From NCBI GenBank assembly GCA_010909165.1, contig MU008159.1:186001-250000 (forward strand): 64,000 nt of DNA, written 5' to 3'. Each line of letters begins with the position of its first letter. Positions within the stretch are counted from its first letter, which is position 1. The notes below the pieces were generated by a model, which searched no databases, was not told where the DNA came from, and was given only the letters and a program-made list of their open reading frames with translations. The position numbers were made by a program, and so were the translations under genes. The DNA is from Anthoceros angustus. Taxonomy: Eukaryota; Plantae; Anthocerotophyta. This document shows positions 5,646 to 50,350 of the stretch, one piece after another.

Positions 5646-6608
5646 CTACTGGAAGTTCCTGTCTCCTTCAAACGTCTGCCCAAAGGTCCAGTTGTCGGAA
5701 GCTACGTCGTAGAACGTGAGGGTCTGGCCATCGCTTGTGGTGACTTGGAAGGAAAGACTCTGCCCATCCAGCTTGGAATTGCTCTGCCAGTTCTGCCCCC
5801 AGTTTCGAGACATGGGCTCCCAGCCGGTGTTTGAGCCCTTGATGGACACAGCGTGAACATCACCGGCCCCTCCCACATTGCTCACCAGGACCAGGTTGAA
5901 GTAGGAGTGCCCATTGACGGTGAAGTGGACGCCTCCTTTCTTGACGCAGGAAACCCTGTAGGCGGAAGCATGACCCAAGGAAGTTCAGTTTGACAACTGT
6001 TTCGCAGTTTCAGGACGGCTCAGAATGAGGTAGAATTTGAAGAAACTGTTACCTGCGGTAGAAGACGGGAACAATGCCGGCTCTGTACTGTGCGATTTGC
6101 TGGAATGCTGGCTGTGACATGTCGAAATGCTGCAGGGGCTCATTGCACCAGCCTCCGTTGTCGTTGGGGAGAGAAGGGTTGGGGGGACACAGGTTAGTGG
6201 CAGTGACGACGATGCTTGATGCTCCTGCAACACACCATTCCGGCTGGTTGCACTTGATCTCAAAGCAAGCGCCACAGGATAGCCCGTCGTTGAAGAGTGC
6301 TGTGCTCAATGCTGCTGTGGCGAGTCCATAGCCTTGGCTGTACAAGTTGCTGTACCCACATGCACCGCCTGCAAAACAATTCACATCCACCTTCAGTCTG
6401 TTTCTCAAGGCAAATGGAATCCGATCCTGGGCCCCTGGGCACCGTGATGCTTACCCATTGTACCAGAAGCATCACTCCCTCCATAAAATGTGGCATGCCC
6501 ATCTTGCCAGCTTGAGCCAGCGTAGTCTCCTGACACAGACTTGAGACATGCGGACATGAATGCAATCACTGCCATTGCTACAGCTGGGAATCTCGACTGT
6601 CGTGCCAT
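5646..6608 (-). CDS. EXPA: Alpha-expansin #1 (3 exons: 6608-6455, 6368-6053, 5955-5646)
   Basis: Signal peptide, [61 protein letters not shown] and RNWGQNWQS. Canonical EXPA intron positions. Confidence 0.96.
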
Positions 6609-14090: not shown

Positions 14091-15193
14091 ATGGCGGTTT
14101 CTCTGCAGAGATTGAGCACGACGGCATTGGTGGTCGTCCTGTTCCTACTTCCTTCTCCCCAACTCGTTCTTGCGAAAGGAAAACACGGAGCTACAGTTGG
14201 GCACCACAAAGCTGGAGGCGGTCACCACAAAGCTGGAAGCGGGCACCACAAATCCGGAAGTAGCCAGAAGAAAGGTGGCAGCTCTGGTGGTGGTGGTGGG
14301 AGCTATTCTGGAGGGGCTGGCTGGTCATCTGCCCATGCTACATTCTACGGAGGCAATGACGCCTCTGGGACACTGGGTATGCAGCAACCGATCAAACTCC
14401 TGCTCTCCTCTCCGCTTTGCTTCCAATTTCGAAGCACAGGTTCTGATCTGGCCGGCTGGTTGCAATTGCAGGGGGCTCATGTGGATACGGAAACCTGTAC
14501 GACCGGGGCTACGGAACCAGCACAGCAGCTCTGAGCACAGCGCTGTACAACAATGGAGCCTCCTGCGGGGCCTGCTTCGAGATCCAATGCACGGGCTCCA
14601 GGTGGTGCAAGGGATCTGCCCCCATCACAATCACTGCCACCAATTTCTGCCCTCAGAATCCAGCTCTCCCCAACAACGCTGGGGGCTGGTGCAACATGCC
14701 TCTGCAGCACTTCGACATGTCCGTGCCTGCGTTCCTGGAAATAGCAGAGCAAGTGGGCGGCATCGTTCCCGTTAACTACAGAAGGTGAGAGGCCGCCATG
14801 GGCTATGCTGAATGCACCACATTGCTGAAATTGAATTTGAAGCTGGTCGTGAACCGTGGCCTGACGTTTCCACTGCAATGTTCGATGTGCAGAGTTTCGT
14901 GTGTGAAGAAGGGGGGCATCCAGTTCACAATCAATGGCCATGCCTACTTCAACTTGGTGCTCATCACCAACGTGGGCGGAGCAGGAGACGTGCACGCTGT
15001 TTCCGTCAAGGGCTCTAAAACCGGATGGGAAGCAATGACGAGAAACTGGGGCCAGAACTGGCAGAGCAACTCCTACCTCAACGGCCAGAGCCTCTCCTTC
15101 CAAGTCACCACCAGTGGCGGCACCCTCATTTCCTACGACGTCACACCTGCTGGCTGGAGCTTTGGGCAGACCTTCTCTGGAGCCCAATTTTGA
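14091..15193 (+). CDS. EXPA: Alpha-expansin #2 with His/Gly/Lys N-terminal extension (exons 14091-14376, 14472-14784, 14893-15193)
   Basis: Signal peptide, (GHHKxGx)x3, [34 protein letters not shown] and [12 protein letters not shown] introns at standard positions. Confidence 0.95.
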
Positions 15194-16344
15194 AGACTCC
15201 TTCACCTTACTTCTTTTCCGTCAAATCGGTCTGCTGTGTAATTGTATGGATCTTCAACTCTTTCTGTTGGATAGCCTTCTACCCAATGCAATGGGCGCAA
15301 GGCATGTATCATAGTTAAAGGTATGGACTGAGAAGTATGTAGATGGGAGCCCCATTGAAGGATAGCCTCTCATCAGGGTGCTTGGTTTTGACACATGTGG
15401 TCATAGCTCAGTTGTGTTAGTTTGCAGAAGAGGTGATTTGTATGCAGCTATTGCCACCCTCTGCACTACACCACGGATGCCAAGGTCAGGCCTCCATCTA
15501 GACAGCAGTTTATTGTATAAATAGATAATAGACTACCACGAGTTGGAGAACATTCTGCTCCTACCCTACATGGACGAGTTCCTCTTATTAAATGTAATGC
15601 CATTTCCACACAAGCCTTCTCCTTCTAAGCGTATTTCAGTTTCCTGCCATTGATGGCAAAGAGAAAAACGCTTCAAATTCTTTCTAATTTTTTTTGCGTT
15701 GCAGTCTCTGGATGCGATGAATGGAAATTGGTTTCCTCCCAGCCAGGTGCTCAGCACTCATTCCACTCTCTAGGAGGAGAATGTGCTGTACCTTTTGTCT
15801 GAAGGGGTTGTAAATGTGGGGAGCTATGCACATGTTCGTCAGGAAAGGTCGATTTACTGCACTCAATGTCCAGCGTTGATTTGTCGATACGGCGTTGCAG
15901 TTGCTCATGCAGCTGTCCAGTAGAATGTTTTCTTCATACCGCAAGCATAGGCGGCAGCTTGGCCGATTCCTTGGGTACAGCAAAAATAGTGTTGAAATTT
16001 TGTGAGTGGCGACTTCCTGCAGCTTCCCACATCCCGAGAAAACGACTGCGTCAAACAAGACCTCAGCAAACTGCAAAGTAGTTGTTGTTACCAGGCAAAA
16101 TAAGAGTAGAGTACACTGGCTGTGCTGCGGGGATCTGAATTTGATTCTGGCCCGCAGCCTGCTACAAAGCGTTTCTAACAGTCTATCCAGTGAGGTGCTT
16201 GGACGGTCCGACGGACCATATCCACTCACATGTTAGTGTTGTATACATGGAGCTGCGGGGAGCTCTAAAGCGCTCACCTCGGCTGCTCTTTCGTATAAAA
16301 GTACAAGGAGTTGGTGCAGGCAGAAGGACAAGACAAGGTTGCAG

Positions 16345-17454
16345 TTATCCGCGAAATTGCCTTCCTTCGTAAGTGGTCCCGAACTTCCAGCCAGCAGGGA
16401 TGACGTTGGGGCTGTTGCAGAATCTGTTGTCGCTGGTGATGACTTTGATGGAGAAGGATTGCCCGTCCAGGTAGTCGTCGTTCTCCCAGTTCTGTCCCCA
16501 GTTCCTCTTCAAAGCCTTCCAAGAAGAGCCGGAGCCGACTTGGATGTAAACTTCCCTCACGTCTCCTACTCCTCCCACGTTTGTGATTAGAATAAGGTTG
16601 AAGTAGCTGTGGCCGTTGATCTGAAACTTGATACCTCCTTCTTTCACGCACTTCACTCTGGGAGACAAAGCGGCGCACACAATTCAGCAATCGTTGCAAC
16701 AGAAGGTGCAAAGTGTAACAAATCAAAAGATTGTTACAACAGTGGTCCCATGACAACGTAGGGCCGCAGCAAACGATAAAGCGTACCTGCGGTAGTTGAC
16801 AGGCACAACTCCAGTGACCGCGGCGGCCATCCTGGTGAATGCTGGCTGGGACAGGTCGAAATGCACTCTCGGCGCATTGCACCAGCCGCCGGTCGATCCT
16901 TCCGGACAATAATTGGTGGCCGTGACAACAATCTTAGGCGCGCCGGAGAAGCATCCGCCGGTACATTTCAGCTGGTAGCAGGCTCCGCAAGTTTCCCCTC
17001 CCCCGAACAGAGCCGAGCTGAGAGCGGCGGTGTTGGTGCCGTATCCTTGACTGTAGAGATTTCCATACCCGCACGCCCCGCCTGAAACACAAAATCAACA
17101 AGAAGGTGAGACGAAGGCAACAAACATACAAACATGCATCCACATCGATTCTCCGTTGCAGAAATTACGAAGAACGTGCGTGTTCCACTTCATGCAGTCC
17201 CTGGACAACAAGAAATGCTACAGAAAAAACGAACAGTCTCTCGACAGCAAGAAATGATACAGAAAAAGTCATCTCCTCGTTTCCTGCGTCTCCATCAGCT
17301 CATACTCACCGTTGGTCTCCGATGCGTCGGATCCTCCATAGAACGTCGCATGCGCCACTCCCTTCACCCAGGGGTAGCTAATTTTGCCGTGAACTATCCG
17401 GCAACTGACCAAAACAAGAGCCAAAACCAGCTGCAAGCAGCTGATTCCTGCCAT
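16345..17454 (-). CDS. EXPA: Alpha-expansin #3, short-loop type (exons 17454-17310, 17081-16787, 16657-16345)
   Basis: [18 protein letters not shown] signal, [50 protein letters not shown] and RNWGQNW. Confidence 0.93.
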
Positions 17455-20400
17455 TCTCACAGTCTGAAATCTGAGCTGCGCCTGAAGGCAGTGACTGGAA
17501 TCCGCTACCTTGACAGCAGCGTTCAGGGACTCATTGACGAAGGGAAAAAAAACAGAGAAATTCTGAAATCCTCCACAAGAGAACGACAGAGCAATGCTCC
17601 ACGACCGGAGCTCCAAACACGAGACAAGGGCTCAGAATTGAGACGAATTCAGCACAGACGGAGAGACGAGCGTGCAGTGCAATGCGATGGTGAGAGCCTG
17701 AGGAGGGAAGGCAAGAAGCCGCGACTTAAAAGGCCTTCCTGAAAAAACGATTAATAGCAAAAGAGGCTTTCGCAAAAGAGACGGCAGGAAGGGAGGGAGG
17801 TGAGTGGGCGAAACGGAACGGGCCCCGTCGGGCGGGCCTGACACCGGGCACATGCTGCAGGTGCCAACCCTGGTGAGCGTCGGGTTGACTCGTCCGCTGT
17901 GATGTAAGCGCAAGCGCACCAGGCCACACCAGAACATGAATATCCTATCCCGCGCGGAACACTGGAAACCATGTTGTCGGCTCGTCTCGTCGCGTCTCGA
18001 TTTGTTACGAATCGCTTCGCAAATTGGCTTCGCAAAATGGCATCCGGCTTGTGCAGGAAATGTGTGTGCCTAAATGAGGAGCATTTTTCGGATAAGAAAA
18101 AGGCTGACAGATTAATAGTAATAGGAAGTGGCGGGGACGAGATCCCGGGCGCAGAGCACCGACAATCGGGAAAGGGCCAAAGGCATAAAAGAGAGAAAGA
18201 AAGCAGCGGCCCGAAAGGGGCTGCAAGCCATCATCGCCCGGGCGATGCGCTCCAATGATGAAACGCAAAATGCCTTTCGCCGTGGGCGGGGACCGGGTAG
18301 AGCGACCGACCCGCTCCCCAAGGCGCGTGTCCCCATGTCAGTGGGCCCCGGCCAGGGCCCGGGCCCGGGCCCGGGCCCCGGCCCCGGCCGGAGAATGGTT
18401 TTTCTTCCTCCTGTCGGTGGGAACGCGGTGCCGCTCCGAAATCGCCCGATAGGTGAGCCCGGGATAGGGGTTCGGTTTTACCCCGCTCGTGTGGCCTCGT
18501 GTTGCGAGATTCTGGTGGACGTTGCGTGTTGCAGGGTTGCAGGCACGCGAGGGGGAGCGTTGGACGTGGTCGCGCCCGAAGTGTGTCAGTGCGAGGTCCG
18601 AGCGGCCGATGGGAGCCTGCGAGGGAACGGCCGGCCCGGCGGAGACGGGCTGCGATGGGACCACAGCAGACGACGCAGAGGCAGCGAGGCCGCGAGGGTG
18701 GAAGGAATGGGACGGCATGCCAAGGAATGGAATATGGAATAACTCACTCCGGAGATGCAGAAGAGGGCAAGGAACTGAGAACTTGGGACTTCGCCACCCG
18801 AGAAAGTGGTTTAGCGAGGCCAATAATTGAGAGGCGGCAGGTACAGGGATGCATTGTATAATCTAGGTGGTGGAGGTGGTTCTGGTATGCATTGACGCAT
18901 TGATGCAATGATGCAATGATGCATTGATGCATTGCTGGGCAGTGGCCCGGCCAAACAGTGCCGCCGATCGGGCTTCCCGACCCGATCGCGCACAACCGCA
19001 AACCAGCATCGAGCCCCATTCGGCTTGCTGGCAATCCGGTGCTGGAAAGTACCACAGCCAGACGCACGACCGGTGCAATGCACCAACAGCTGGTCATGAG
19101 TCCGGAGTTTCAGTAGCTGCAGTAGGTCGTTGCAATTGCGGCGTTGGGACTCTCAGCAGCCCGATTCGGGCTCCTGTTTGACGTACCTGTACGCAAGGCA
19201 GTGATGAAGGCCCCCTTCCAGTTCCCTGCTTCCTGCCTGCGTGCGGCCGCTGTGAAGCGAGCGCCAAACGCATTCGTAAGATCATGCCGTGTGTGTGCGT
19301 AATGGTGATGTGGGTCGTGATGCGATCACAGTGACGCGCGTCCTGCCCCGGAATCTGCATGCCACACTGGTGCGCTGCGCACCCCGGCACCCCACAGCCC
19401 GACCGAGACGTGCGTCGTCCCTTTCGCGATGTACTTGCATGGACTGCGCTCTTTCTTACTGTTTCTTGCTCCACCAACAAGCAAACCAAGAACCAAATAA
19501 AACAACGCTAATCACTCTCTTCTAAACCACCCCTTAGGTTGGGAGCTTAGTCCCTCTTTTTCAGTTCACCCTCAGGGTCCGCCTTGGTTGTCCCTGCTGG
19601 ATGGGCTTCTTCCCATCGTTTCTTTTCCTGCTGGATAGGCTTCTTCCCATCATTTTTTTTCCTTTTTTTCCTTATTAGAAAAAGAAAAGAGACCCTCTAC
19701 TCATCATATACCTAGACCACGGGTGGATCTGATTTTGCATTTGAATTCGGAATAAGCACAGTGAGGGCATGATGTTTGAAGCTTCCCCTTTTGGGTTCTC
19801 CTGGCGTCCTCGGGACGCAAACATTGCCCTTTTTTTGGGGCTTTGAGGCCACCAGTACGCACATGGCCATGAACAAGTCCGGACCACGGCGCGTTTGCGG
19901 CCCGACCCGGGCTTCTGGTGGTCTGGTCACCCGCCTCCCCGACACCCGTCCCGTCCGCGCGGACTGGACGGCGGAGGCTTGCTTGATGGAAGGTCCAGCC
20001 GTCCGCGGCGACGTGGCGTCGTCGCCGACTCCGGATGCTTATCGCTGATAAGGGCATTAAAAACAATAATTCGGCGAAGGCCGATAGCCGAGAGCCGAGA
20101 GCCGAGATCCGGGACCAGTCGCAGGCGGGGCATGTGAGGTGGGGCCTCCTCCCGCCCGGACAACTTCCAAAACTGCCATTACCGGCCCGGCCGAGTGGCC
20201 TGGTGGGGCCTGCGTTCCGTCTGCCCAATTAGACGGCGTCAGAATCCCATGGTTTGTCCGGAGTGAGGAGCGGGTAGCTACGAGCGGCTGTCCGCCATCC
20301 GCGCTCGGCCTATTCCAAAGCCCCGCCATGATGACGCTCATCGACGGCTGCGGCTCCCCGGCTTCCATCCGACGGCCGCCGTGTCCGGGCCAGACGGTCG

Positions 20401-22039
20401 TTAATTCCGTTTGGGCAACTGTCAACGGCCGCGAGTTGACCTTCTTGGGCTGCGCCCAAATCGGGTCGTGATAAAATTTCGGGCTGCTGCATTTTCGGGC
20501 GTCGGATGGGGGTGGGCCTGGCGATCCGGCGGTGAGGGACGGCCGTCTGTTTTAACCGGGCTCGGCTCGGCTCGGCGCGGGGACAAGACGGCGTCAACGG
20601 GCTCGGCGGTTACCGGATGCGACAAGACAAGAAAGCTATTATTCGGGAGCATTACGGAGTAACGCGATGCACGATCGGCTTGTTGGTTAGCGCTTTGGAG
20701 TGGGGAACAGGACTGTTGAGTGCCGGGATCGAATCCGATGCGCGGCTGGTAGGGTTGATTATCGATCGAGTTCCTCATACCCCGACATTAACGTCCGACA
20801 TAGATGCTGCGACAGCATTACGCGCGTTAATAAGGTTCAACGCCCGGCCGGCCCCACGGGATGGTGGCCTTGAGTTTAGGGTTTGCGAGGCCCAATAGAA
20901 CATTGTCATCGTGCTGAAGTGGGTCTGGCAAAGCGGGGCCCGGGCTTAGGCGCTTTCTCTTTATGCGCCTTGTCTTTACGTAAAGTGCGGCTTGTGACCT
21001 CACTTATCTGTGCGCGAAGACGGGGTGGCGGGCCCGGGAGATCTGGATCGTCCATTAATCGTCTCATAAATGGCTGGGTAATGGAATCGTGTGAAGGGGG
21101 GTGTTAACGGGCACTGACCTTTGACCGGGACCGGCTGCTTCCATTTTCACCTCGGCTTTACTTTTTGGAAGCGCGTTATTATTAAAAGGCAGAGGGCAGT
21201 GCAGGCCGGGCCCGCGGACCGGCGCCTAACCCGGCCCGTGTTTGAGCCACAACCACCGTGACGACATTAAATGACCGGCCCGGTTGTAACGGGACCTGGA
21301 GTGTAACGGAGATGGGTGGGCATGCATGTATGGCATGTGCAGCGTGGGGCTGGGCAGAGAGGAAGTTGGCCCACATGAGGAAATTGCACATTTGCGCTTG
21401 GCCCACCCCCTTGTGTTTTCCACATGGAATTCCATGGCCTTTGCGCCCTTCCCAATGCAACCCACTCCCATCCAACTACAGTATCCGCGTACTGCAAGAT
21501 TGGAAGCAGAAGGAGAAGGAGAAGCAGAAAAAGAAGGAGAAGGAGAAGCTGGTGGGATATTTATTCGCATGAGAATCAGGTTTCGCTCCCCAAGAGATTT
21601 GATAATGTTCTCCTCTAATTGCTGAGCATTCATTGCTCCGTAAGTAAGGAGACTCTTGGGATGCACATGTAACTTCATTCATCCAAGTGTTTGGATTAGA
21701 AAGCATTGGATTAACCCATTAAAATTGAATGCATCATGAAAACTTGCCAACCAAGATCATACCCTATCAAACCCTATCAAACTTGGGTAAGGATATTTTC
21801 AGTGTGGGTAGTGTGAAAACTAGGTGTGAACCCACAACTTGAATCAATAAAAGACATGTCGGAGTACTTATTGTCGTCCCATGTGTGTCGTACCTAGGGC
21901 ATGTTTGAGTTCATCATCAGGACTAGGTAGTACCATGAGCATGGCCGAGGGGTTCAAACGTAGTAGTACTCTCAACCTTTTCTAACACTGGGATGTCATG
22001 GAATTCATACGACTCTTGCATTAAATCTAGCACGCAGAG

Positions 22040-22392
22040 ACATAATGAACGGCATGGCCAACAGAACGTCTAGTCTCATCACCTTACACTTACATGTTCG
22101 TATACACACAGCTCTTCTCATCAAGTGCGACCGACAATTCTCTTACAATCTCGCACGTATTGATATAATGGAAGGCATGGGCGATGAAACGTCTAGTGCC
22201 CATCAACTTACACAGAGCTCTTCTCATCAATTGCGACCGACAATTCTCTTACAATTCTCTCGCAATCTCGCACGTATAGATATAATGGAAGGCATGGCCG
22301 ACAGACCGTCTAGTGCCCATCAACTGACACTTACACTTGTTCGTATATCTACGGCTCTTCTCATCAAGGGCAGCCGACAATTCTCTTCCTAC
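22040..22392. repeat. Degenerate ~110-120 bp tandem repeat x3
   Basis: Recurring cgtctagt..catc, gctcttctcatcaa, ccgacaattctctt and caatctcgcacgtat..atataatggaaggcatgg blocks. Confidence 0.8.
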
Positions 22393-23808
22393 ATCAAGAG
22401 ACTCTGACATAACAACGTACCCAAGACTTACCATGACTAAGTTGCTCGGACACAACTTCTCACATCAAATACAGCTAGCTTCTTATGACATACTAACTTC
22501 TAAAAAGAACGGAATTTATGTAGTCATCTAATCTCGCACACTTGTGCAGCAATCTCATAATTCACAGCCTCCTTGTATAAGCTTGTACAAAGAGAAATAA
22601 ATAGGCATGCAGAGGTGGTGCCCTAGGTAATTTAAAACTTGCTACTAGAGCAAGTCGGGACCAAAGAAACCCTAATGCAAATTGGCGGGAGATTTGAGAG
22701 CTTGCAACGCACGTTGAGTGGGAGTGATTAGGGTAAAGAGGGGAGGCCGGTATTGACCGGGAGGGTGGCGGTTTAGCGCGGCGGTTAACCGCTTTTCCCG
22801 CGCCCGCCAGGGCGGGACCCGCTTACCGTAACCGCCCGGGTACCGGCAAATGGCGGTCTTGATTGACGGGGCGGGGTAAAACGGCGAAGCGACGGGCAAG
22901 GGACAAGCCACGGGCAACACCACGTGAAATGAAATGCCGGGTGGAAAGCGGTTACCACCATCATGATTCAAACCCGGGGTGGTTACGCGGATTAGGGCCG
23001 GCTAAACCGGGTCGGCCAGGGCCTAACAGCCGTTAACAGAACCCAAGAGCCGCACCCCGGGCGCGTCTGTTTGGTTAAGCGGGCAAGCGGTTTCTGGTTT
23101 CCCTGCCCAGGAAACCTGCCTCGCTTCCAGCGCTCCATCCGTCTTGTTTCCGATCTTTCTTCCCACCATCGGCAGCGGCATCGCATCACGGCTGTATGTA
23201 CATACATACGAGCCATCGTGCCCTCCAGGACTGGCGCCCAGTTGATGGCGATGCTGTTTTTCATCTCCCTGCATTTCTCCAATTCCTCGTCCTGATTTCT
23301 GAGCTTGCATTCCATTCATCCTCTTCTCTCCTCTCGCCTCCCCCACCTCCATCCTCCTCCTTCCTCCGCCTCTCCTGCTGCTCTGCGCTCTCCCCTGCTC
23401 TGGCCCAGATGATCTGCAGCACCAACCCAAAGCAAATTGGTCATCAGCCTTTCATCGCCCATTGATTTCCTCTTTGCCGCATTTAGCCCCGCTTTTGTCC
23501 GGACCCGCAGCTCGCCGCTCTCTCTCCTCTGCCATAGCCTGCCTCTCTCTGCGAGCCTGCGGCTGCTGGGAGCATAAAGGCCCGGCCTCCGGCCGTCGGT
23601 AATCCTCCGCATTTGCTTCCTCGCCTCCGGCTCTCCTCTCAGGCAGCCTGCATTCCGGCCCAGTTCTCGGCATTGCCGCCGCTGGCATCTTGCAACCTGC
23701 CTGTCCCGAGCATTTAGCTTCAGCCCAGGAGCAACTTTGCAGGAGCTTTGCCGAGCTCGCTGCCTGCTCACTTGCAAGCCCGCTCTCCCGTCCCCCCTTC
23801 CCCCTGCG

Positions 23809-24885
23809 ATGGCGGTCCTGCAAGTGAGCGTTTTCTTGGCTGTGTTTCTCGCGGCGGCTGTGCAGCAGGCGGGGGCTGTGGGAGGCCACCCTCCCGGCGT
23901 GGGCCACCACCCCCCCGGCCATGGCCACCACCCTCCCGGAACCGGGCACCACAAGAAGGGGTCTCAGACTGGGAGCAGTGGCGGGGCTCTGGGAAGCTGG
24001 AACAGCGCCCATGCCACATTCTATGGCGGAAATGACGCCTCGGGAACAATGGGTGAGTGTCGCCGTCTCCCCTCCTGGAGCTGCTTTCTTGGGCCGGACA
24101 GAATTGGGTTCCTTCTTTGCATGCAATGCTTTCGCCCTTCCACTTTTCTCACCTTCCTGCTCCATCTTCAGGCGGAGCATGCGGCTATGGCAACCTCTAC
24201 ACTGAGGGATACGGCACCAACACTGCCGCCCTGAGCACTGCCCTGTTCGACAACGGGCTCTCCTGCGGGGCTTGCTTCGAGATAGCCTGCGACTCCTCCG
24301 GCACCAAGTACTGCCTCGGTTCCAACTCCATCACCATCACTGCCACCAATTTCTGCCCGGAGAACCTCGCCCTCCCCAACGACAACGGCGGTTGGTGCAA
24401 CCAGCCCCGCCAGCATTTCGACATGGCCGTCCCCGCCTTCGACCAGCTTGCCGCCCATGTCGCAGGAATTGTGCCCATCAAGTACAGGAGGTGGGTCTCT
24501 CGCCCACGAGCGCTCTCTTCTTCGGCAATGTGGCCGGAAGTTGGGTTTCTGACGTGGTTTCTTTGTCTTTCTGCTGCTCAGGGTGTCTTGCGTGAGGAAG
24601 GGAGGAGTTCGCTTCCACCTCAACGGCCACGACTACTTCCTGCTCCTGCTGGTCGACAACGTGGGAGGAAACGGAGCAGTTCACTCTGTGTCGCTCAAGG
24701 CCGGCAACGGGCAGTGGAAGGCCTTGAGCCAGAACTGGGGCCAGAACTGGCAGAGCAACGACTACATCACGGGCCAGCCTCTCTCCATCTCCATCACCAC
24801 GGAGGACGGCAAGACATTGGTCTCCAACAACGTTGCTCCTGCGGGATGGAATTTCGGGGAGACCTACGCCGGCTCGCAGTACTGA
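23809..24885 (+). CDS. EXPA: Alpha-expansin #4 with His/Pro/Gly N-terminal extension (exons 23809-24052, 24172-24490, 24582-24885)
   Basis: Signal peptide, [61 protein letters not shown] and NWGQNWQS. Confidence 0.95.
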
Positions 24886-27800
24886 GCAAAGCAACACTAC
24901 GGGCCGGTCTTGTGTACCATAGCAGCAGGACTCTCTATTTGGTGCAGCAGCTTTTCTGTTTCTTGTATTTTTTTACGTCGAATATGCGGATGCAGTGGCT
25001 GATAAGGCAGCCCGCTCCACAGCCTTTCAATCGCAGCTGTGCAGCAGCGGAAGGTGGCTCTGCTCTTGCCTCCCGCTGCACAGTTGCAGGATTGAGCGGC
25101 CTAGTTTGTTAGCCCTACATTTGAAGGTAGCCGAGGTGGTAAATAGCCACCCGCTGTGTTCTATAGCGAGGAAGGTTGAACAGGGAATACCTATTTGGTC
25201 TTGGGTTGTGTCTCTGCGAAGTGAGATCGGCTTCTTGCCGTCCCTTCCAGGGTCCCAAGCACTCTTATCTAATCAGCCCTCAATATGAGCTGTGCATCGT
25301 CCAGTGCGCCAGTCTTCGTAATACAAAGTGTTTGTGGCCCAATTTGGTCCTTGAAAATATATCACTCTCTCCCTCCACTATGCTAATTACAATCGTCTGT
25401 CGTGCCATGTCCGATCCTCTCAATCTCGTACGTTTCCGTTTGCTGCAAACAAATCAGCTGCCATTTCCATTTCGGCAGGGCCCGTCCGACAATTGTGCTC
25501 AGACGGTTGTCTGGTCCGGTCTCGTGCATTCTTGCGTGTCCGTTTCTGCTTCTGCCTCTGGCTCTGGGACTGAATTTCAAGTTTGAACCTGCGCTATTTT
25601 CGATCGAGTGCTCAAGAGGGATGTGCCCGGGCCCCAACTCGTGTTATTACGGGGTTGGTTGTACTGTTTGCAAAACCTGACACAACAGCAGCAGAAAACA
25701 ACATCGGAGAGGGAATCTCGTGTGCAATCCCCGAGCCGGTCTACATAAGCATGACCTGCTCTGACCGGCCCTCACCTGCCCTGACCGGCCCTCCTGCTCC
25801 TGCTGCACAAGTCTCGCCAAGCCTAAAGCATGATCAGAGTGTGACGAATGTGCGCACCTCCCACACCTGCAGCATTCTTTCCCAAGGTAAAGATAAAAAT
25901 AAAAAGAAAGCAGAATGTGAAGTCATGTTGTACCACCCATTGCCTGGGCTCTGGGTTGCAAAGGTAGCAGATGAGAGAGTGGAACACAACCATTGGGCGT
26001 TGGGCAGGTTGGGTGGGATGAAACGCCCACCTTCTCACGCCCACCCAATGAGGATACCAATCTCTCATCTTGCGTGCAAGCTGCATAACTGCCTAGGGTA
26101 AACCGCGGTGCCTGCTGCCTGGAGGGCCAGGCTTCAACTGGCTGCCAGTTCCAACTTCCAGTTCCTGGCTATGGTGATGAGGTCACCCCGAACGCAAGCT
26201 GATGTCATGGATTGATGACTTTGGCAACGTTGTCGGATTCGAAGAGACTCTGTTTGTGCGTGCCACTGTGGGCTGTGGGTCTCGGGCCGACCAGGAGGGA
26301 GGCAGGCACGCCTGCGAGCTGCAACTGGCTCCTGGAGGAAGCGATTCGCGGCGCGCTGCGAGGCTGCGAGGCCAGGCAGGTGCCCACTTGATGGACGCAC
26401 TGCAAATGTAGCGAGTGGCACCAGTTTCGCCCGACCGGGGCCCAGTTGCGCCGCCCGGGCCGGCCCCACGCTGCATGGGACCATGGGACTCGGCAGATGT
26501 CGGGCCGGGGCGTGCTGTCTGGGGCAGCGTGTTGCCGGGCCGCGGACACCGGCGGCCTGGCGCGGCCTGCGCCGGGCCGAGTTTAGGGTTTTTTTATATT
26601 TGCTCTTATCGTTTTCCGGCGAGTGAGCGAGCCGGGAGCGCATTCGCCACTCATTGCGAAACGGGATGGGATGCAGGGAACGGCGCACGGGGCGGCCGCG
26701 TCCAACGGGGGTGGGGCCGAACGGTACGGCGCTGGACGGGACGGGGGGGTCGGGACGGCCCGCCACCCCGCCACCGCTTGCTCAAGTACAGCAGGAAGCG
26801 ACAAGCGACGCATGTGCCCATGGCCCCATGGGCTCGCCCACACATGCCCATGAGACGTCTCGCAATGGCGAAAGGAGGAACGGTGAAGGGAAAAGGGAAA
26901 AGGGAAAAGCAGAGCCCTCTCTTCGGCATTGCTTCCAGATGGGAGAGTCTGCGTAAAAGAACATTCTGGGCGGCCTGGCCTGGCCGGGCCTGGGCCTGGC
27001 CGGGCCTGGCCTTGCCTTGCCTGCCCTGCCAACATTGATGGCTCCTCACCACCTTCAGGCCCGTTCTGAGGCCGGTGTCATAAATCCCAGATGGGTTGCC
27101 ATAAGTGAGGTAACAGAGGACTGATGAAGCTGCTGCGACCACAACAGGGGTGCAGACCTGCAGTCTGCACCTTTTGCAGCAGGCTTTTGCAGGGATGGGA
27201 GATAAAAGACGGATCGATGCACAGAGGAGGATTGAATGAGTGAAGGGCGAGCGTGGTGGCACTGTAGCCACAATCGGGCTGGGCTCTGGCCATGGCCACT
27301 GGGCTCTGGAGTCTGCAACTGGGCAAAGAAGCAGCATTTTCGCTGACCCAAAGCCTGCGCGGGATTTCATGTCAGATAGTCGCACCCACAACACGCATGG
27401 GGCTGATTTTGGATTGAAGGATGCAGTTGGGATCCAGGATTTTCTTCACCACAACGTATGGACGTACTGTTGTTGCGTCTTGTATCTATCCTTTCTATCT
27501 ACCTCTGTCTACCGGGCGAGGGAGACTGTTGCATCAACTGCCAACCACCAACATCCCAACTTCCGAGCGTCCCAATCCCGGGAGGCGGAGCCCGATTCAG
27601 GGGTCGGGCCCAGGGTACAGTCAACTGCTCCAGGTCCAGGTGCAGCCTCCTCCGGACCGGTTTGGATGCAGTGGCAGCATCTCATACACGCACATTCGCA
27701 CATGCGGTGCGCGCTTGGAAACAGACAACGTGAACGCACGTCTCCTCCCACGCCACTGTTTCTTCTCACACTCCACCGCATGCGCTCATCTTTTCTGTGT

Positions 27801-29475
27801 GAATGTATTTGTGTAACTGGAATGCGCTGTGTAGGATTTACTATGAATGGCATGGGCGGTGTGTTTGGTTTCAGGCAGTGGAGCCCATTGGCCGATTGGG
27901 CGCACGCTCGCTGCATGTGTGAAGCTTTGTAAAAGGTGACGGGGAAGTGAAATGCCTTTCTCCTTCGTGAGCCCTCCGCCGTCTATAACCTACCGCATCC
28001 CACGCAGGCGCAAGCCTCGCCCGTCCTTCGCAGCCACGCAGTTTCTGCGCACCTCTTTGTTTTCTTGTGGGAGAATCTGTTCCAGATGTGACGGCCTCTT
28101 CGCTCTTTCTCACTGCTTGCAACCGATTTTCATCCTCTTTGCTTGGCTGCTTGGTGAGAGAAAGGGCTATGGGTTATCCAAAGCCAATAAGTGCTGAGGA
28201 CCTGGGAATCATCGTTCGAACCAGTTCAGAATAGAAAGCAATTAAGAGAGCAACCGAGATGCTCGCATTTAAAGCAAAAGTGAAGACACTGGCAGCCGAG
28301 TTCCCCTCAATATGTATCGTCTTCACCAGACTTTATTGTGACTTGGTTGCACCGAATTTGGATTCTCGTCAGCACAGGCTTCATTCTCATTGATGCATGT
28401 GACTCAGCAGCATGTGAACTTCATTGCCTGCTGAATACATATGAGAGAGTGTCAGCTCACCTTAATTCACACATTGGTGATTCTCGGATTGCGGTCTCCA
28501 ATATACTTGGGCACTTCCATGATCCTGTTAGCCAGCAACGAGATGAAATGGGCTTGTCTCCGAACGATGATAGCCAGACGGGTCGTTGGATCCAGAAAGC
28601 TGTAAAGTTGGAAACTTGTGATTATGCTGCCCTGACGCTGGAGAAGTCCTCGAGGCAAGACACATTGAGACCGGCAGCTCACCCAGCCTGAGGGAGGAGA
28701 TAAAAGCTCCACTCTCCACCCTGACAGGATCATACATCGATTATCGTAAACAGACAAAAAGACAAAGCTTGGGCGCAGTGAGCAACTCACCACTGGATCC
28801 CTGTAGCAGTCAACCAACTTCCAAGTACACAAAGGAATAGGTGTTCACACAGGGAAACTCAGGTAGTGGTCAAAGTTGGAAATGAAACAGACCGACTTCA
28901 AAAGACTACGAAATGCTGGAGTGTCTATAGCGATGCAGTGGAACGAATAATAAGTGAAACAGCCAGTTTATTCAAATGGAAAATAAAAAATGGTGACATC
29001 CACATTGCTGGGGTGCACGATGGCTACACAATTCGGGTGAGCACACAATAAATAATCATCTACAAGGGTAAGATCCATAAGCGGGCATTTTAGGGGACCA
29101 CTGGGTTTGATGTTTCCCAATGACCCCCGCCTCAGCTTAAGATCCATATTTGCTGGCATGTTTCATGTAAAACAAACACCAGAACTGTCCAAATGACACC
29201 GAGCAGGTGGCAGCTGAAACAGATGGAGCATCAGATTGCACAAGTTGGGCTGGGCGGGACTTCCGTTGCTGGAAATATCACCTACACACCAAACATTAAG
29301 CCCATAGCAGGCCCGCAACTTGTGGGCAACTTCGGCCGCGGGCGACTGAAGGCCAAACCACAGCACTGCCAAAGTAATAGCTGTCGAGCTTCATGAAGGA
29401 GGCTAGCACAACCTGTACAATCTGCAAACCTGCTGACTCTGCTGGCGCCTACTCCTTGCGCCATGCACAGTCAGC

Positions 29476-30729
29476 TTAGAAATTCTGTGCAGACTGGTAG
29501 GTCGAGCCGAAGCTCCAGTTGGGAGGAGCCACATTGTAAAGAACAATCGACCTCCCGTCACTAGTTCTGACCATGAAGGAAAGTGGCTGTCCTGTCAGCA
29601 CTGCACCGGCTTGCCAGTTCTGTCCCCAGTTCCTCTGCATCGGGACCCAGTTGCCATTGCCCTTGATGGACAGAGCCGTCACAACACCATCCCCAGCAAC
29701 ATTGTGTATCAGGACGAGATCAAAGTTCGGGTTGCCGCTGATGGTGAATCTGATTCCACCTTTGCGAACGCAGGGCACTCTGCGCAGTAGACGACAAACG
29801 ACATGAGCAAACTCCAACAGCCACCGTACTACTTGCAAACCATTCGCAAGAAATGAGGGATCGGTACTGACCTTCTGTAGTTCACTGGAACAATTCCTCC
29901 AACGTAAACTGCAAGCGAGGTCCAAGCAGGGACGGACATGTCAAAGTGCTCCCTGGGAGGGTTGCACCAACCACCATTGTCGCTAGGTAGGGCCCAGTTG
30001 GGAGGGCAAGAGTTGGTAGCGGTGATGGTAATGGAAGGGTTTCCAGGCAAGCACCACTTGGATCCGTAACATTTGATCTCATAGCAGGCCCCGCACTGAG
30101 CTCCGCTGTTGAAAAGGGCATAGCTGAGGGCGGCATTGGCGATCCCGTAGCCAAAGCTGTAAATGTTCCCGTACCCGCATGCACCTCCTGCACAAGGACC
30201 AAATCCAAGTCAGATCGGGCCACTCCCTCCGCATCTGGAGCCGGAATGAAGCAGAATTAGCATAAGAAAGCAAAGCCTCACCATTAGTTCCCGAAGCATC
30301 GTTTCCTCCATAGAACGTCGCATGAGCAGCCTTCCACGGCCCGCCAGCTCCGGATCCTCCACCGTATGAAACCTTGGGAAGAGTAGGCTTCTTAATCGGC
30401 AGCTTCTTCTTGGGAATGCGAGGCTTCTTGATCTTCGGCAACTTCTTCGGCAGCGACGGCTTCTTCTTCGGCAGCCACGGCTTCTTAGCATAAGGACTCG
30501 GCTTCTTCTCCTTCTTCCCCTCACTCTTCTTCTTCTTAGCCTTCTCCTTCACGCTATCCTTCTTGTGCAGCTCAACCTTCTTCTTCAGCGGCTCAACCTT
30601 CTTCCTCAACTTCTTCGGATCCAGATTCTTCTTCTGGTACCTCTCCAGCACGCCATCCACCTCAACGGCCTGGTACGCCACGAACATCATCACGGCGAGC
30701 AGCAGCACCTGCCATCTGATGGACGCCAT
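29476..30729 (-). CDS. EXPA: Alpha-expansin #5 with ~93-aa Lys/Pro-rich N-terminal extension (exons 30729-30282, 30187-29872, 29779-29476)
   Basis: [26 protein letters not shown] signal, poly-K/KKP tract, [46 protein letters not shown] and RNWGQNWQ. Confidence 0.94.
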
Positions 30730-31040
30730 CCCTGCAAACCTGCAACCAATCGTCCCCCTCAGACACAGCCTCCGGCCCCCAGCTCCCCGAACCCTGCCTC
30801 TCCACAACAGACAGCCAGATCCGATACCGCACAGCCAGCACAAACAACAACAAAGCAAATCTGAGCACCAAAAGCCACCAACCAAACCAGCACAACCAGA
30901 TCCACACCACCACACAAGAGCGGCATATGCACCTGGAAGCTCCGATCGAGCTCTCCGAGGCAGGCAATGCGCGCGAGCTGCAGGTACGAGGGCTGGTGAC
31001 GAGCGATGTGCGATGTCCTGGCAGGCGGGAGCAGCGAGGC

Positions 31041-31046
31041 TATATA
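31041..31046 (-). promoter_or_regulatory. Candidate TATA box of expansin #5
   Basis: tatata in GC-rich context. A plausible 5'UTR intron (donor ~30932, acceptor ~30732 or ~30740) would leave a short leader exon. Confidence 0.4.
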
Positions 31047-33091
31047 GCGGGGCGACGGCATTGAGCGGGTCCCGCCGGCGTCGCTCCAAGTCAGAGGAAT
31101 GCACCAATCTCTCTGTCAGCAAGGCGCAAGGACGCTCGAGACGCGATCGGGGCCGGGGCCGATCGAGCCCGACGCCGCCTTGTTCGCCTGCTCGCCAGGG
31201 CCGGGCACTCGTTCCCACGACCCGCCCTTCCCGAAACAGCAAACACCAGGCTTGTTAGTCGGTGCGGTGATTCGTAACCGCTAACCACACAGTCGCACCA
31301 GGCTGTTGCATTCCTGTTCTGTTACCGCGTCGGCCCATGCGCCGCACACCGCCCGGTCCTCCGCGTGCCTCGACTCCCGCGACCGCTTCCCCCTGGTCGC
31401 CCGTCCCCCGCCCCATCATGCCGTCTTGCTTGCTTTTGACCTCCCCAACTGCCGCCAACGGTCCCTCCGTAAGCCGCACTTTCTTACTTCACCCCGCCGG
31501 CGTGCGACGTGCTGGTGCCCCGGATCATTGATCATTTCCGATCCCAGCCTACTTCACGAATCATGCATGAGCCCGCCATCCATCAATCACCCCGCCCATC
31601 TTCTTCCCAGTTGCCAGTTGCGTTCCATCGAGTGTCTGATGCTCCGGTATGTACAAGGAACAAGCTGGGTTGGATCATGTCGTTAATTCGCATTCTGGTG
31701 TGAGCTCCGCCTAAACGGATTCAAACTTCCAAAGGAAGTCCGTCCTGCAGACATCTCTTCAGAATGCGAAGACGCGAGTGGGATATCTCCTGTACATTTT
31801 GCAATCAATTCCATCGGTCCATCAATTCCGTTGGCAAGGGATGTGGGCAGGCTTTGGAGAGCACTAATCGGGGCTCTGACACCTCGTTAATTATTGAGAT
31901 GCTCTGACCCGCCAAAGCAGGCTGTTTACAGCGATACTCTTCTGTCTCCTGACCCGATAATTAGGCCCAAAGGGCATGCTTCTATTTTAGCCTAGCGGTT
32001 CAGGCGGAGGCCCCGCACAACCAGGTCTGGGGTTCGATTCGCTGGGGCAGCGATAACGACGCGACGGGGGAATGAAAAAATCATTCAGTACGGCGGGCCG
32101 ATGCTGCTGCCGAGGATGTGAGATGTGAAGCCTGGACGAGAATGGCGTTGACGAGGCGAGAGGGCGGGCTCGAAATTTGAGGAAGGGCGCGAAGGTCGCC
32201 GAACCCGAACTCGGCGTTTCCGGGAGGCCAATGGGAGTTATTATGGGCCTAACCATGTTGCAAGCACGTGGTTGCAGCGAGGGAAGATGGAGACGCTGTT
32301 CGACTGAGAACATGGAGGACTGTGGGCCAGCAGCAGGCGCAGCAGTGGACCAGCCCCAGCCCCGGCCCCGGCCACCGGTTACTGTTTCAAATTCATTGGG
32401 CTGTGGTATTGGCCCCCGCTTCGGGCGGATGTCATGGCTTACGCAATCTTAAAACTACAACCGAAAGAACTGCCGGTCAAGTAAACGCCAGCTTGTGAAT
32501 CAAAAACTGTGTAACTCCCGAAAAGAGACCCGACCGCTGCCACCCCAGCTACTGTACAGTCGCCGTCAATTCAATCCTTTCTCATCAGACCAAGCTACAG
32601 TCGGAGTCAATGTTACATACAAAAGTTTCTACCGTTTATGTCATACTTTTTATTATAAATATCATAAACAATAAGGTATGGTAAAGTATAATTTACTATA
32701 TAAGGACTATTGAAAACCTCCAAGGTTGTATTAGTTCCAAGAGCCCTGATTACCAAGAGCCCTGATTACGAGGCTTGTTAGGCTTGGCCAAAAACTTGGC
32801 ACAATGTGTTGTCCTTATGCACCCATTGTTTAGCGACTTTGGGGACCACTCTCTCTCCAACTTCTAGGCTATGCTCCACAAAGGTTATGTTTTGATGAGC
32901 CTTGAGTTGGTTGAGGCCATTCCTTAAGCTCTCCATGACCTAAGATCCTCCCTAATTGCATCAAATGGGTGGGTTGATACAGCCTTTTGTTACGAGTTTG
33001 TTTGGAGCTTCCCTTGAACACAAGGGCTCTTGTTTTAATGTGTTTCTGTCTCTTGCTGCAGCCCAAAATGTATTCGAGAGACATGTTCTAT

Positions 33092-49016: not shown

Positions 49017-50350
49017 ATGGCGTGAGTGAAACTCCGCTCCAGCTCGTGCTTGTGATTGCCTTGTGCCCCTGCCCCTGCCGCGCGTGCTGCCCTTGCTTGA
49101 TTCTTGATGCTCGTTCTCCATCGGATCTTGGTTCGCATCCGCCGCTGTGATGTTGGAAAGGGGAGAGGATGCCATGGCCATTTTTGACATCCCAAGTGCT
49201 TGCTTTTTCTGTCCAGGACCCGGAGAATTTGTGAGGTTTTGGCAATCGGGTTTGTCTTGCTCGCAATTTGCCGTGGCGCGAGCGGGCAGACGAGTTGGAC
49301 CACCGGCGCCACAGCCACGTATTACGGCGGGTCAGATGCATCAGCCACAAATGGTGAGCGGACAATTTTTCTTTCATAGCTGCCGGACGATGGACTTCTT
49401 CCCCCGGGATGCGATGCAATTGCGCATGCGCAGCCGTGCTGTAGCTAGGATTACGTGTTGAGACTTTGCGGCAATGGTTCTTGATATAATGTTCGCTGCT
49501 GTACTCAGACTGTCGGAGTCCGACTGCTGTGGTTTCTTTTGCATCGAAATCGGGGCATTCTTGAATCTTTCCCTGATTGTGGCATTCCCGGCTGTTGAAA
49601 TTCGCATCGTGTAGGAGGAGCGTGTGGCTATGGGAATCAGCTTGCTCTCTACGGTACAATCACAACCGCGCTGAGCAGCGCATTTTTCCAAAACGGTGCC
49701 ACCTGTGGAGCCTGCTACGAGATACAGTGCACCGGCTCTAGCTACTGCTACAGCGGGAAGACGGTCAGGGTCACTGCCACAAACCTCTGCCCCGACGGGA
49801 GCTACGGAGGCTGGTGTGACGGGAGCAAGAAGCACTTCGACCTCTCGCAACCGGCCTTTACGCAAGTCGCACAACAAGTCGTTGGCCATTTCGCAGCGCA
49901 GTACCGCAGGTGAAGTGAAGTCCCCCCTTGTCCTGCCTTCTCTTGAATCTTGCGGTGTTTTCGTGTATTCCCGGTTTTGGAGAGGCACGCAGGCTGTGAT
50001 ATCGATGCTCACATGTGTATATCGTTCTTCTTGATCAATTCAGAGTCCCGTGCACGAGGTCGGGCGGTGTTCGATTCACCATCAATGGCAACGCTTACTA
50101 CAATCTGGTGCTCATCCAAAACGTGGCGGGCGCTGGTGACGTGACGGCAGTGTCCATTAAAGGCTCCAACACCGGCTGGTTGAGTATGTCGAGGAACTGG
50201 GGAGAGAACTGGGAATGTGACACCAGGCTCGTGGGACAGGCGCTGTCATTCCAAGTCACTCTCAGCGACGGCACAACGAGGACATTCAACAACATAGCGG
50301 CATCGAATTGGGCATTCGGCAGCACGTATTCGTCATCGGTCCAATTCTAG
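49017..50350 (+). CDS. EXPA: Alpha-expansin #6, short-loop type (inferred exons 49017-49021, 49217-49353, 49615-49909, 50044-50350)
   Basis: ATG GC|gtgagt...tccag|G ACC gives the signal [25 protein letters not shown]; [55 protein letters not shown] and RNWGENW. The first micro-exon is inferred. Confidence 0.9.

What the first reader, a model, noticed from the sequence alone, without database searches (positions are those of the whole stretch)
14091..30729. Expansin cluster in which three paralogs carry cationic low-complexity tails
Seen: #2, #4 and #5 each have a positively charged, repeat-built segment between signal peptide and the W..AHATFYGG start of domain 1, ending in a Gly/Ser linker. 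#1, #3 and #6 do not. Established: canonical EXPAs are signal + DPBB + CBM63 with little N-terminal extension, and polybasic segments of wall proteins can bind de-esterified homogalacturonan. Inference: this may be a modular system that addresses the same wall-loosening core to different wall polymers or pH conditions. I cannot check whether it has already been described.
Basis: partly seen in the sequence, partly recalled or inferred. Interest (0 to 1): 0.75.

Follow-up and report, generated by a model that had tools for sequence, protein, structure and literature searches.

The report
Alpha-expansins with cationic N-terminal tails
A plant (probably hornwort) gene cluster encodes six ordinary wall-loosening alpha-expansins, three of which carry an extra positively charged, repeat-built tail that probably tethers them to acidic pectin; the histidine type also occurs unremarked in rice and lycophyte expansins, while I found no match for the long lysine/proline type.

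Summary
The window carries six three-exon EXPA genes. In three of them, exon 1 encodes a cationic low-complexity segment between the signal peptide and the conserved Trp that starts domain 1.

- **g2 (14091-15193, +):** a 49-aa tail with three GHHKAGx heptads and a Gly/Ser run.
- **g4 (23809-24885, +):** a 40-aa tail with three GHHPPGx heptads.
- **g5 (29476-30729, -):** a 110-aa tail, 34% Lys, net charge about +30.

All three tails are built of in-frame 21- or 36-bp tandem repeats. The DPBB and CBM63 cores behind them are intact.

The His tails are not unique. Similar His/Gly-rich tails sit at the same position in EXPAs of Selaginella, Diphasiastrum, Acorus and the grass EXPA5 group. No paper I could search discusses them. 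I found no counterpart to the Lys/Pro tail of g5.

The best reading is that the tails are disordered electrostatic tethers to pectin, switched by pH in the His type and constitutive in the Lys type. That function is inferred, not shown.

Limits: no RNA evidence and no hornwort orthologues were reachable. Spliced proteins were searched exon by exon, and the joined search was left out. Earlier scan notes cover this same stretch only, not other DNA.

The parts
5646..6608 (-). g1: EXPA gene without a tail (exons 6608-6455, 6368-6053, 5955-5646; 259 aa)
   Evidence: About 7 aa lie between the predicted signal-peptide cleavage site and the conserved Trp.
14091..15193 (+). g2: EXPA gene with a His/Lys/Gly tail (exons 14091-14376, 14472-14784, 14893-15193; 299 aa)
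   Evidence: One search gives the model. In one search, exon 2 matches DPBB_1 (5e-20) and exon 3 matches Expansin_C (1e-30). One search shows 44/49 and 33/33 conserved EXPA residues kept.
14175..14321 (+). g2 tail: 49 aa with three GHHKAGx heptads (21-bp repeat at 14199-14260), then a Gly/Ser run
   Evidence: The AF2 single-sequence model shows no secondary structure and pLDDT about 50-56.
16345..17454 (-). g3: EXPA gene without a tail (exons 17454-17310, 17081-16787, 16657-16345; 250 aa)
23809..24885 (+). g4: EXPA gene with a His/Pro/Gly tail (exons 23809-24052, 24172-24490, 24582-24885; 288 aa)
   Evidence: One search gives the model. One search gives DPBB_1 at 2e-20 and Expansin_C at 2e-29. 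One search covers the conserved residues.
23878..23997 (+). g4 tail: 40 aa with three GHHPPGx heptads (21-bp repeat at 23886-23952), then a Gly/Ser run
   Evidence: The heptads align in register with those of g2.
29476..30729 (-). g5: EXPA gene with a long Lys-rich tail (exons 30729-30282, 30187-29872, 29779-29476; 355 aa)
   Evidence: One search gives the model. One search gives DPBB_1 at 4e-20 and Expansin_C at 8e-29. One search shows 45/49 and 32/33 conserved residues kept.
30337..30666 (-). g5 tail: 110 aa made of a Lys/Glu-rich part (aa 22-75, modelled as a helix), a Lys/Pro-rich part (aa 76-121, LPKK/KKP units from 36- and 21-bp repeats) and a Gly/Ser linker
   Evidence: The frame is open in only 2 of 2000 dinucleotide shuffles, and the other two sense frames hold 3 and 8 stops.
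49174..50350 (+). g6: divergent EXPA gene without a tail. The exon 1 reading frame has no ATG, and the nearest ATG (49174) is in another frame.

Best explanation
g2, g4 and g5 are intact, secreted alpha-expansins whose first exon has gained a disordered, positively charged N-terminal module. The module grew by in-frame tandem duplication of short units.

The module lies between the signal-peptide cleavage site and the normal mature N-terminus. It would therefore be a free, flexible arm on the mature protein.

I propose that it acts as an electrostatic tether to the carboxylate-rich pectins of the wall (de-esterified homogalacturonan and RG-II). The tether would set where and how long the loosening core stays in the wall.

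The His-heptad arms of g2 and g4 would be pH-gated. They are strongly cationic at the acid pH at which expansins work and lose much of their charge near neutrality: g4 nearly all of it, g2 about half, because its seven lysines stay charged. The Lys/Pro arm of g5 would bind at any wall pH.

Shown here:
- the gene structures;
- the position, composition, charge and repeat origin of the tails;
- the homology of the g2 and g4 tails;
- intact cores;
- the same kind of His tail in other plant lineages.

Inferred: presence of the tails in the mature protein, pectin binding, and any effect on wall loosening.
For: Coding status:
- Each tailed gene has a single ORF running from Met and a hydrophobic leader through the tail into W..AHATFYGG. 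No later Met follows the tail.
- The g5 tail frame is open in only 2/2000 shuffles.
- All repeat periods are multiples of 3.
- No splice pair of the type used by the ten introns of g1-g5 can remove a tail while keeping the signal peptide.

Functional cores:
- Pfam finds DPBB_1 and Expansin_C in exons 2 and 3.
- 44-45 of 49 and 26-33 of 33 positions that are at least 95% conserved in 80 EXPAs are kept, including all Cys, HFD, GGWCN and NWGxNW.

Retention of the tail:
- The g2 and g4 heptads align in register, with 59% identity over exon 1.
- Their cores are only 71% and 58% identical, so the tail has outlasted an old duplication.
- His/Gly tails sit at the same site in Selaginella, Diphasiastrum, Acorus and six grass EXPA5-group proteins.

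Charge and disorder: charge values are. The g2 tail is unstructured. The g5 tail is modelled as a helix followed by an extended Lys/Pro segment.

Published analogies:
- Polyhistidine and the AGP31 His stretch bind RG-II reversibly, best at pH 2.5-5.5, while polylysine stays bound (PMC10707938).
- EXLA1 is anchored by de-methylesterified HG through electrostatic forces (Men et al. 2026, as cited in PMC13477033 and PMC13493406).
- The GHHPH repeats of mammalian histidine-rich glycoprotein bind heparin when protonated or Zn-loaded (PMC5372734).
Against: - There is no transcript, proteomic or binding evidence.
- No hornwort orthologue could be retrieved, so conservation within the lineage is untested.
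- Open reading frames over the short GC-rich g2 and g4 tails are not significant by themselves: 457/2000 and 1498/2000 shuffles stay open.
- Low-complexity repeats can spread by slippage without any function.
- Strong binding to pectin could lower loosening activity by holding the protein away from its target sites between cellulose microfibrils, rather than help it.
- The per-exon trees are too poorly resolved to tell shared ancestry of His tails from convergence.
Confidence: 0.5

Rival explanations
1. The His-rich arms of g2 and g4 are metal-binding modules (Zn, Cu or Ni) rather than pectin tethers. They might buffer apoplastic metals, or acquire charge through metal loading.
For: GHHxxG repeats resemble the GHHPH/GHPPH repeats of mammalian histidine-rich glycoprotein, which bind Zn and Cu (PMC5372734). 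The tails hold 7-8 His within 40-49 aa.
Against: This does not explain the Lys/Pro tail of g5. At the acid wall pH where expansins act, His is protonated and binds metals poorly. In HRG, metal loading and polyanion binding work together, so this reading may complement the main one rather than replace it.
Confidence: 0.12
2. The tails are propeptides that are removed, or act only in the secretory pathway. They might keep the expansin inactive, or escort it together with pectin, until it reaches the wall.
For: The N-terminal extension of maize EXPB1 has been suggested to serve recognition, transport or packaging (PMC4021193). The Gly/Ser linker followed by a canonical mature N-terminus would suit a processing site. 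Cationic peptides are proposed to meet pectin already in the Golgi (PMC10707938).
Against: No recognisable processing motif was found. Grass EXPA5-type tails are kept in annotated proteins, but their maturation is not known either. Nothing here tests cleavage.
Confidence: 0.13
3. The tails are tolerated by-products of replication slippage in exon 1 and have no function of their own.
For: They are simple tandem repeats. Their content differs between paralogues. The short g2 and g4 frames would often stay open by chance.
Against: The g2 and g4 heptads are kept in register, with the His-His pairs unchanged, across a duplication old enough for 29-42% core divergence. The 330-nt g5 tail keeps one frame open against odds of about 1 in 1000. 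All three tails have the same sign of charge. His tails recur at the same site in distant lineages.
Confidence: 0.15
4. The tails are gene-model artefacts: the real mRNAs splice them out or start elsewhere.
For: No transcript evidence was available. The models are mine, built from motifs and GT-AG rules.
Against: There is no Met with a hydrophobic leader downstream of any tail. No in-frame donor/acceptor pair like the ten real ones removes a tail without destroying the signal peptide. Annotated proteins of rice relatives and Selaginella have the same layout.
Confidence: 0.07

Closest known systems
Canonical alpha-expansins (EXPA; signal peptide + DPBB domain 1 + CBM63 domain 2)
   Same: All six genes have DPBB_1 and Expansin_C domains, HFD, GGWCN (GGWCD in g6), the conserved Cys and Trp residues, and introns A and B.
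   Different: g2, g4 and g5 carry 40-110 extra residues between the signal peptide and the mature N-terminus. In 201 reference EXPAs the median length up to the conserved Trp is 33 aa.
EXPAs with His/Gly-rich N-terminal tails in public databases: Oryza glaberrima expansin-A5 and grass relatives (P0127-P0129, P0085, P0153, P0155), Selaginella SELMODRAFT_179212 (P0078), Diphasiastrum (P0182), Acorus EXPA10 (P0200)
   Same: The position is the same (after the signal peptide, before W..HATFYGG). The content is His-Gly rich, often GHH or HPH units, followed by a Gly run. This is the closest match to g2 and g4.
   Different: The repeat units differ (GHHKAGx and GHHPPGx heptads here). The grass group forms its own well-supported clade, so common descent of the tails is unproven. 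None has a Lys-rich tail like g5.
His-rich and Lys-rich stretches of arabinogalactan proteins (AGP31, AGP17/18/19) and synthetic polyhistidine or polylysine acting on RG-II
   Same: These are short cationic stretches on secreted wall proteins. The His type binds pectin reversibly with an acid pH optimum, and the Lys type stays bound (PMC10707938). This matches the two kinds of tail seen here.
   Different: Those stretches sit on AGP backbones and are discussed as borate-bridging chaperones. Here they are fused to a wall-loosening core. No sequence homology is claimed.
Expansin-like A1 (EXLA1) binding to de-methylesterified homogalacturonan
   Same: A member of the expansin superfamily is held on pectin by electrostatic forces (Men et al. 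2026, cited in PMC13477033 and PMC13493406).
   Different: EXLA is a different family, absent from bryophytes (PMC13493406). I could not read the primary paper, so I do not know which part of the EXLA1 protein binds the pectin.
N-terminal extension of grass group-1 allergen beta-expansins (maize EXPB1)
   Same: It is an extra N-terminal segment on an expansin whose function is unknown (PMC4021193).
   Different: It is an EXPB, with a short conserved VPPG-PNITT-type motif. It is neither repeat-built nor polycationic.
Mammalian histidine-rich glycoprotein GHHPH/GHPPH tandem repeats
   Same: The repeat unit nearly matches the GHHPPG unit of g4. It is a documented pH and Zn sensor that binds polyanionic glycans when charged (PMC5372734).
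   Different: It is an animal plasma protein, so the likeness is convergent. It serves only as a functional analogy.

Membership tests
EXPA (alpha-expansin) | Domain 1: double-psi beta-barrel with the HFD motif and conserved cysteines | tested here: met
   DPBB_1 scores 2e-20 to 5e-20 on exon 2 of g2, g4 and g5. HFDM or HFDL is present in all six genes. All conserved Cys columns are kept.
EXPA (alpha-expansin) | Domain 2: Expansin_C / CBM63 with conserved aromatic residues | tested here: met
   Expansin_C scores 1e-30 to 8e-29 on exon 3. The NWGxNW motif and Trp columns are kept.
EXPA (alpha-expansin) | EXPA-specific HATFYG motif and alpha-insertion with GWCN | tested here: met
   HATFYGG is present in g1-g5 (ATYYGG in g6). 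GGWCN is present in g1-g5 (GGWCD in g6).
EXPA (alpha-expansin) | Ancestral EXPA intron pattern (introns A and B only) | tested here: met
   There are two introns at the same two codon positions and phases in g1-g5, and at the same positions in g6. This pattern is described as ancestral for EXPA in PMC13493406.
EXPA (alpha-expansin) | Cleaved N-terminal signal peptide | tested here: inconclusive
   Each has a hydrophobic core (mean Kyte-Doolittle 2.7-3.2 over 10 aa) and sites fitting the -3/-1 rule. No dedicated predictor was available.
EXPA (alpha-expansin) | pH-dependent wall creep activity without hydrolysis | not testable with these tools
   This needs extensometer assays with the purified protein.
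Proline-rich / hydroxyproline-rich wall glycoprotein module (considered for the g5 tail and the PP units of g4) | Repeated Pro-containing motifs that are hydroxylated, glycosylated or cross-linked in the wall | tested here: inconclusive
   Repeated LPKK/KKP units make up 12 Pro and 17 Lys in 46 aa, but no Pfam family matches. The only hit is DUF4770 at E = 0.006, below its cut-off. Modification cannot be tested here.
EXPA subgroup with a His/Gly-rich N-terminal tail (not a named family) | His-rich repeats plus a Gly run between the signal peptide and the conserved Trp | tested here: met
   g2 and g4 meet this. Eleven retrieved database EXPAs show His-rich N-terminal tails, one of them (Sphagnum P0103) only weakly. 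Common descent is unresolved.

The most novel reading that the evidence does not exclude
His-heptad N-terminal arms may be an old accessory of a subset of land-plant alpha-expansins. They would have been overlooked because alignments are routinely trimmed at the conserved Trp. In this reading they work as a pH-gated pectin dock that couples expansin retention to apoplast acidification. The 110-aa Lys/Pro arm of g5 would be a previously unseen second solution that fixes an expansin permanently to pectin, giving spatially confined wall loosening.
Probability: 0.2. Interest if true: 0.7.

Novelty: new variant of a known kind. Interest (0 to 1): 0.45.

Why it matters
How expansins are positioned and retained in the wall, and whether pectin takes part in acid growth, are open questions. 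A natural series in one locus would give a ready-made test set for electrostatic targeting of wall-loosening proteins: no tail, a His tail whose charge depends on pH, and a Lys tail that is charged at any pH.

The finding also points to a class of EXPA tails, including rice EXPA5, that gene-family studies discard when they trim alignments. Still, the cores are ordinary EXPAs and the function of the tails is only inferred.

Tried and rejected
Searches that found nothing useful:
- Word search with g5 exon 1, through the stop-free ORF 30082-31242, region 172-320: no hit at E <= 0.001.
- Whole-library HMMER search with g2 exon 1: only 5 hits, all exon-1-sized fragments or chance. The query is too short for a library of 1.8 billion proteins.
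- Metagenome scan with g5 exon 1: one unrelated EXPA, matching only the HATFYGG stretch.
- ESM Atlas look-up for g5 exon 1: nothing at or above 0.9.
- Rfam on the window: no match. The bacterial promoter and terminator scan is irrelevant for a plant gene and found nothing.

Other dead ends:
- No hornwort protein was found in the word-search database. The best identity to g4 exon 2 was 74%, so orthologue conservation could not be tested.
- The per-exon trees were too unresolved to decide between one and several origins of the His tails.
- Carey and Cosgrove 2007 (the Physcomitrella expansin paper) is not held. The 2026 bryophyte expansin paper has no held supplements.

Procedure notes:
I reran it from window coordinates.
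- I made no search or fold with joined spliced proteins. All searches were exon by exon. A joined CDS was used only inside the script, to count its length and stops.

Rejected readings:
- The tails are not introns.
- The g5 21-bp units encode KPWLPKK-like units, which are unrelated to the GHH heptads.
Full report
**What is there**

A six-frame motif scan found six alpha-expansin genes in the window. I built models from the conserved motifs and splice signals.

| Gene | Coordinates | Strand | Protein length |
|---|---|---|---|
| g1 | 5646-6608 | - | 259 aa |
| g2 | 14091-15193 | + | 299 aa |
| g3 | 16345-17454 | - | 250 aa |
| g4 | 23809-24885 | + | 288 aa |
| g5 | 29476-30729 | - | 355 aa |
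| g6 | about 49174-50350 | + | not determined |

g1-g5 each have three exons. Their two introns lie at identical codon positions and phases, and all ten introns read G|GT...CAG|. g6 has the same two intron positions, but its exon 1 start is unresolved. This is the A+B pattern regarded as ancestral for EXPA (PMC13493406).

Pfam finds DPBB_1 in exon 2 and Expansin_C in exon 3 of the three tailed genes. It finds no family in exon 1. An earlier scan note calls the genome probably a hornwort. I did not test that. It fits the lack of any close protein in the databases, where the best identity was 74%. For comparison, the hornwort A. agrestis has only 7 EXPAs in total (PMC13493406).

**The observation**

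It holds. From Met to the conserved Trp before HATFYGG there are 78 aa in g2, 64 in g4 and 132 in g5. There are 34 in g1 and 31 to the position just past the Trp in g3. g6, read from the start of its open frame at 49200 because it has no in-frame Met, gives about 33 to its Trp.

Behind a hydrophobic leader the three tails are as follows.

- **g2, 14175-14321.** 49 aa with 7 His, 7 Lys, 19 Gly and 8 Ser. It has three GHHKAGx heptads from a 21-bp x3 array.
- **g4, 23878-23997.** 40 aa with 8 His, 6 Pro and 13 Gly. It has three GHHPPGx heptads from a 21-bp x3.2 array.
- **g5, 30337-30666.** 110 aa with 37 Lys, 3 Arg, 15 Pro and 10 acidic residues. It is built of 36-bp and 21-bp arrays. It has a Lys/Glu-rich half, then a Lys/Pro-rich half of LPKK/KKP units.

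All three tails end in a Gly/Ser run. The last residues of that run correspond to the normal mature EXPA N-terminus.

Calculated net charge at pH 4.5 and pH 7.5:

| Tail | pH 4.5 | pH 7.5 |
|---|---|---|
| g2 | +13.9 | +6.7 |
| g4 | +9.8 | +1.7 |
| g5 | +35 | +29 |

**Are the tails coding?**

There is no transcript evidence, so this rests on sequence.

- Each tailed gene has one ORF running from Met and leader through the tail into domain 1. No Met with a hydrophobic leader follows the tail.
- For g5, the frame is open in only 2 of 2000 dinucleotide shuffles. The other two sense frames hold 3 and 8 stops.
- For the short GC-rich tails of g2 and g4, openness alone means little: 457 and 1498 of 2000 shuffles stay open.
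- No donor/acceptor pair of the type used by the cluster's ten introns can remove a tail in frame while sparing the signal peptide.
- Annotated EXPAs of other plants have the same layout (see the section on tails elsewhere).
- Single-sequence AlphaFold models give an unstructured g2 tail with pLDDT about 50-56. For g5 they give a long helix over the Lys/Glu part, about residues 38-71, followed by an extended Lys/Pro part. These are weak models and serve only as a hint.

**The cores**

g2, g4 and g5 keep 44-45 of 49 positions in exon 2, and 26-33 of 33 in exon 3, that are at least 95% conserved in 80 reference EXPAs. These include every Cys, HFD, GGWCN and NWGxNW. So the tails sit on what look like working expansins.

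The six paralogues are old. Pairwise identity is 52-71% in exon 2 and 47-76% in exon 3. This is not one core with exchangeable tags.

**History of the tails**

The g2 and g4 exon-1 products align at 59% identity, with the three heptads in register and the His-His codons unchanged. The exon-2 tree pairs g2 with g4 (SH-aLRT 85). So the His tail most likely predates their duplication and has been kept since.

The repeats of g5 encode different units, and I see no sign of homology to the heptads.

g1 lacks a tail yet is as close to g2, g4 and g5 as they are to each other. So either g1 lost a tail or the tails were gained more than once. The per-exon trees cannot decide.

**Tails elsewhere**

Two word searches gave 228 plant EXPAs in all. 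One used exon 2 of g4, read through a stop-free ORF. The other used the N-terminal 90 residues of a Selaginella hit.

His/Gly-rich segments at exactly this position occur in:
- Selaginella SELMODRAFT_179212;
- a Diphasiastrum protein;
- Acorus EXPA10;
- more weakly, a Sphagnum protein;
- a well-supported grass clade that includes Oryza glaberrima expansin-A5, Leersia, Arundo and Aristida.

An exon-1 fragment from an unidentified plant read set also shows GHH units. OsEXPA5 is cited as an expressed cell-elongation gene in several rice papers.

None of the 228 proteins has a Lys-rich tail. The few with long N-termini are mis-called starts upstream of the signal peptide.

**Literature**

Full-text searches returned no paper whose title or abstract concerns such tails. 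The searches combined expansin with N-terminal extension, histidine-rich, lysine-rich and Anthoceros.

- The 2026 bryophyte survey (PMC13493406) and the Selaginella survey (PMC3680112) do not mention them.
- One methods section states that expansin alignments are trimmed from the conserved Trp onward (PMC3191482). That would hide these tails.
- The only N-terminal extension discussed is that of maize EXPB1, whose function is unknown (PMC4021193).
- I could not read Carey and Cosgrove 2007.

**Most likely mechanism (inferred)**

The tails are flexible polycationic arms that hold the expansin on the polyanionic pectin matrix.

For His arms the charge, and so the grip, rises as the apoplast acidifies. 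That is when expansins act. The Lys/Pro arm is charged at any wall pH and should bind more lastingly.

Published parallels:
- Polyhistidine and the 22-aa His stretch of AGP31 bind RG-II reversibly, with an optimum at pH 2.5-5.5, while polylysine stays attached (PMC10707938).
- De-methylesterified homogalacturonan anchors EXLA1 through electrostatic forces (Men et al. 2026, cited in PMC13477033).
- The GHHPH/GHPPH repeats of mammalian histidine-rich glycoprotein bind heparin once protonated or Zn-loaded (PMC5372734).

The rivals are metal binding by the His arms, cleaved propeptides, neutral slippage products and gene-model error. They are weighed in their own sections of this report.

**Limits and procedure**

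- Spliced proteins were never joined for a search or a fold. Every search used single exons or stop-free ORFs by reference. A joined CDS was used only inside one script, to count its length and stops.
- Conservation in other hornworts, transcript support and all biochemistry remain untested.

**Verdict**

- The His tails are new members of an existing but undiscussed kind of EXPA tail.
- The Lys/Pro tail of g5 is a new variant, with no counterpart found.
- The functional reading is plausible but unproven.

Noticed in passing
window 49140-49360 (g6 exon 1): The sixth expansin has no ATG in its reading frame. A stop at 49185-49187 precedes the leader. The nearest ATG (49174) is in another frame, with T-runs lying between the two. 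It is either a frameshifted gene copy or an assembly error. The g6 core is also the most divergent, keeping 36/49 conserved exon-2 positions and reading GGWCD instead of GGWCN.
   Followed up: partly
window 3522-4493 (-): An intronless 323-aa ORF carries a legume-type lectin domain (Lectin_legB, 4e-47). It lies next to the expansin cluster and may be another secreted wall or apoplast protein.
   Followed up: partly
window 60344-63937 (-): A 1197-aa ORF encodes a DEAH-type helicase (DEAD, Helicase_C, HA2, OB_NTP_bind). It has an R3H domain at the start and ankyrin repeats inserted between the two helicase lobes.
   Followed up: no
window 52882-54399 (+) and 55493-56734 (-): Two long ORFs carry a PEHE domain (2e-08) and a CENP-O kinetochore domain (7e-12). 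They look like ordinary nuclear genes flanking the cluster.
   Followed up: no
window 32000-47000: The G+C content drops from about 0.50-0.60 in the expansin cluster to 0.35-0.45 over about 15 kb between g5 and g6. This may be repeat or transposon DNA. I did not examine it.
   Followed up: no
L001 1453-1746 (Logan run SRR36092047): An EXPA exon-1 fragment from an unidentified plant read set has RGHH..GHH units before W..AHATFYGG. An Expansin_C exon lies downstream on the same contig. This is another His-tailed EXPA.
   Followed up: partly
PMC10707938, section 2.1.3: [quoted passage not shown] The next paragraph speaks of 'cationic extensins', so this is probably a slip for extensins. I did not use it as evidence.
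   Followed up: no
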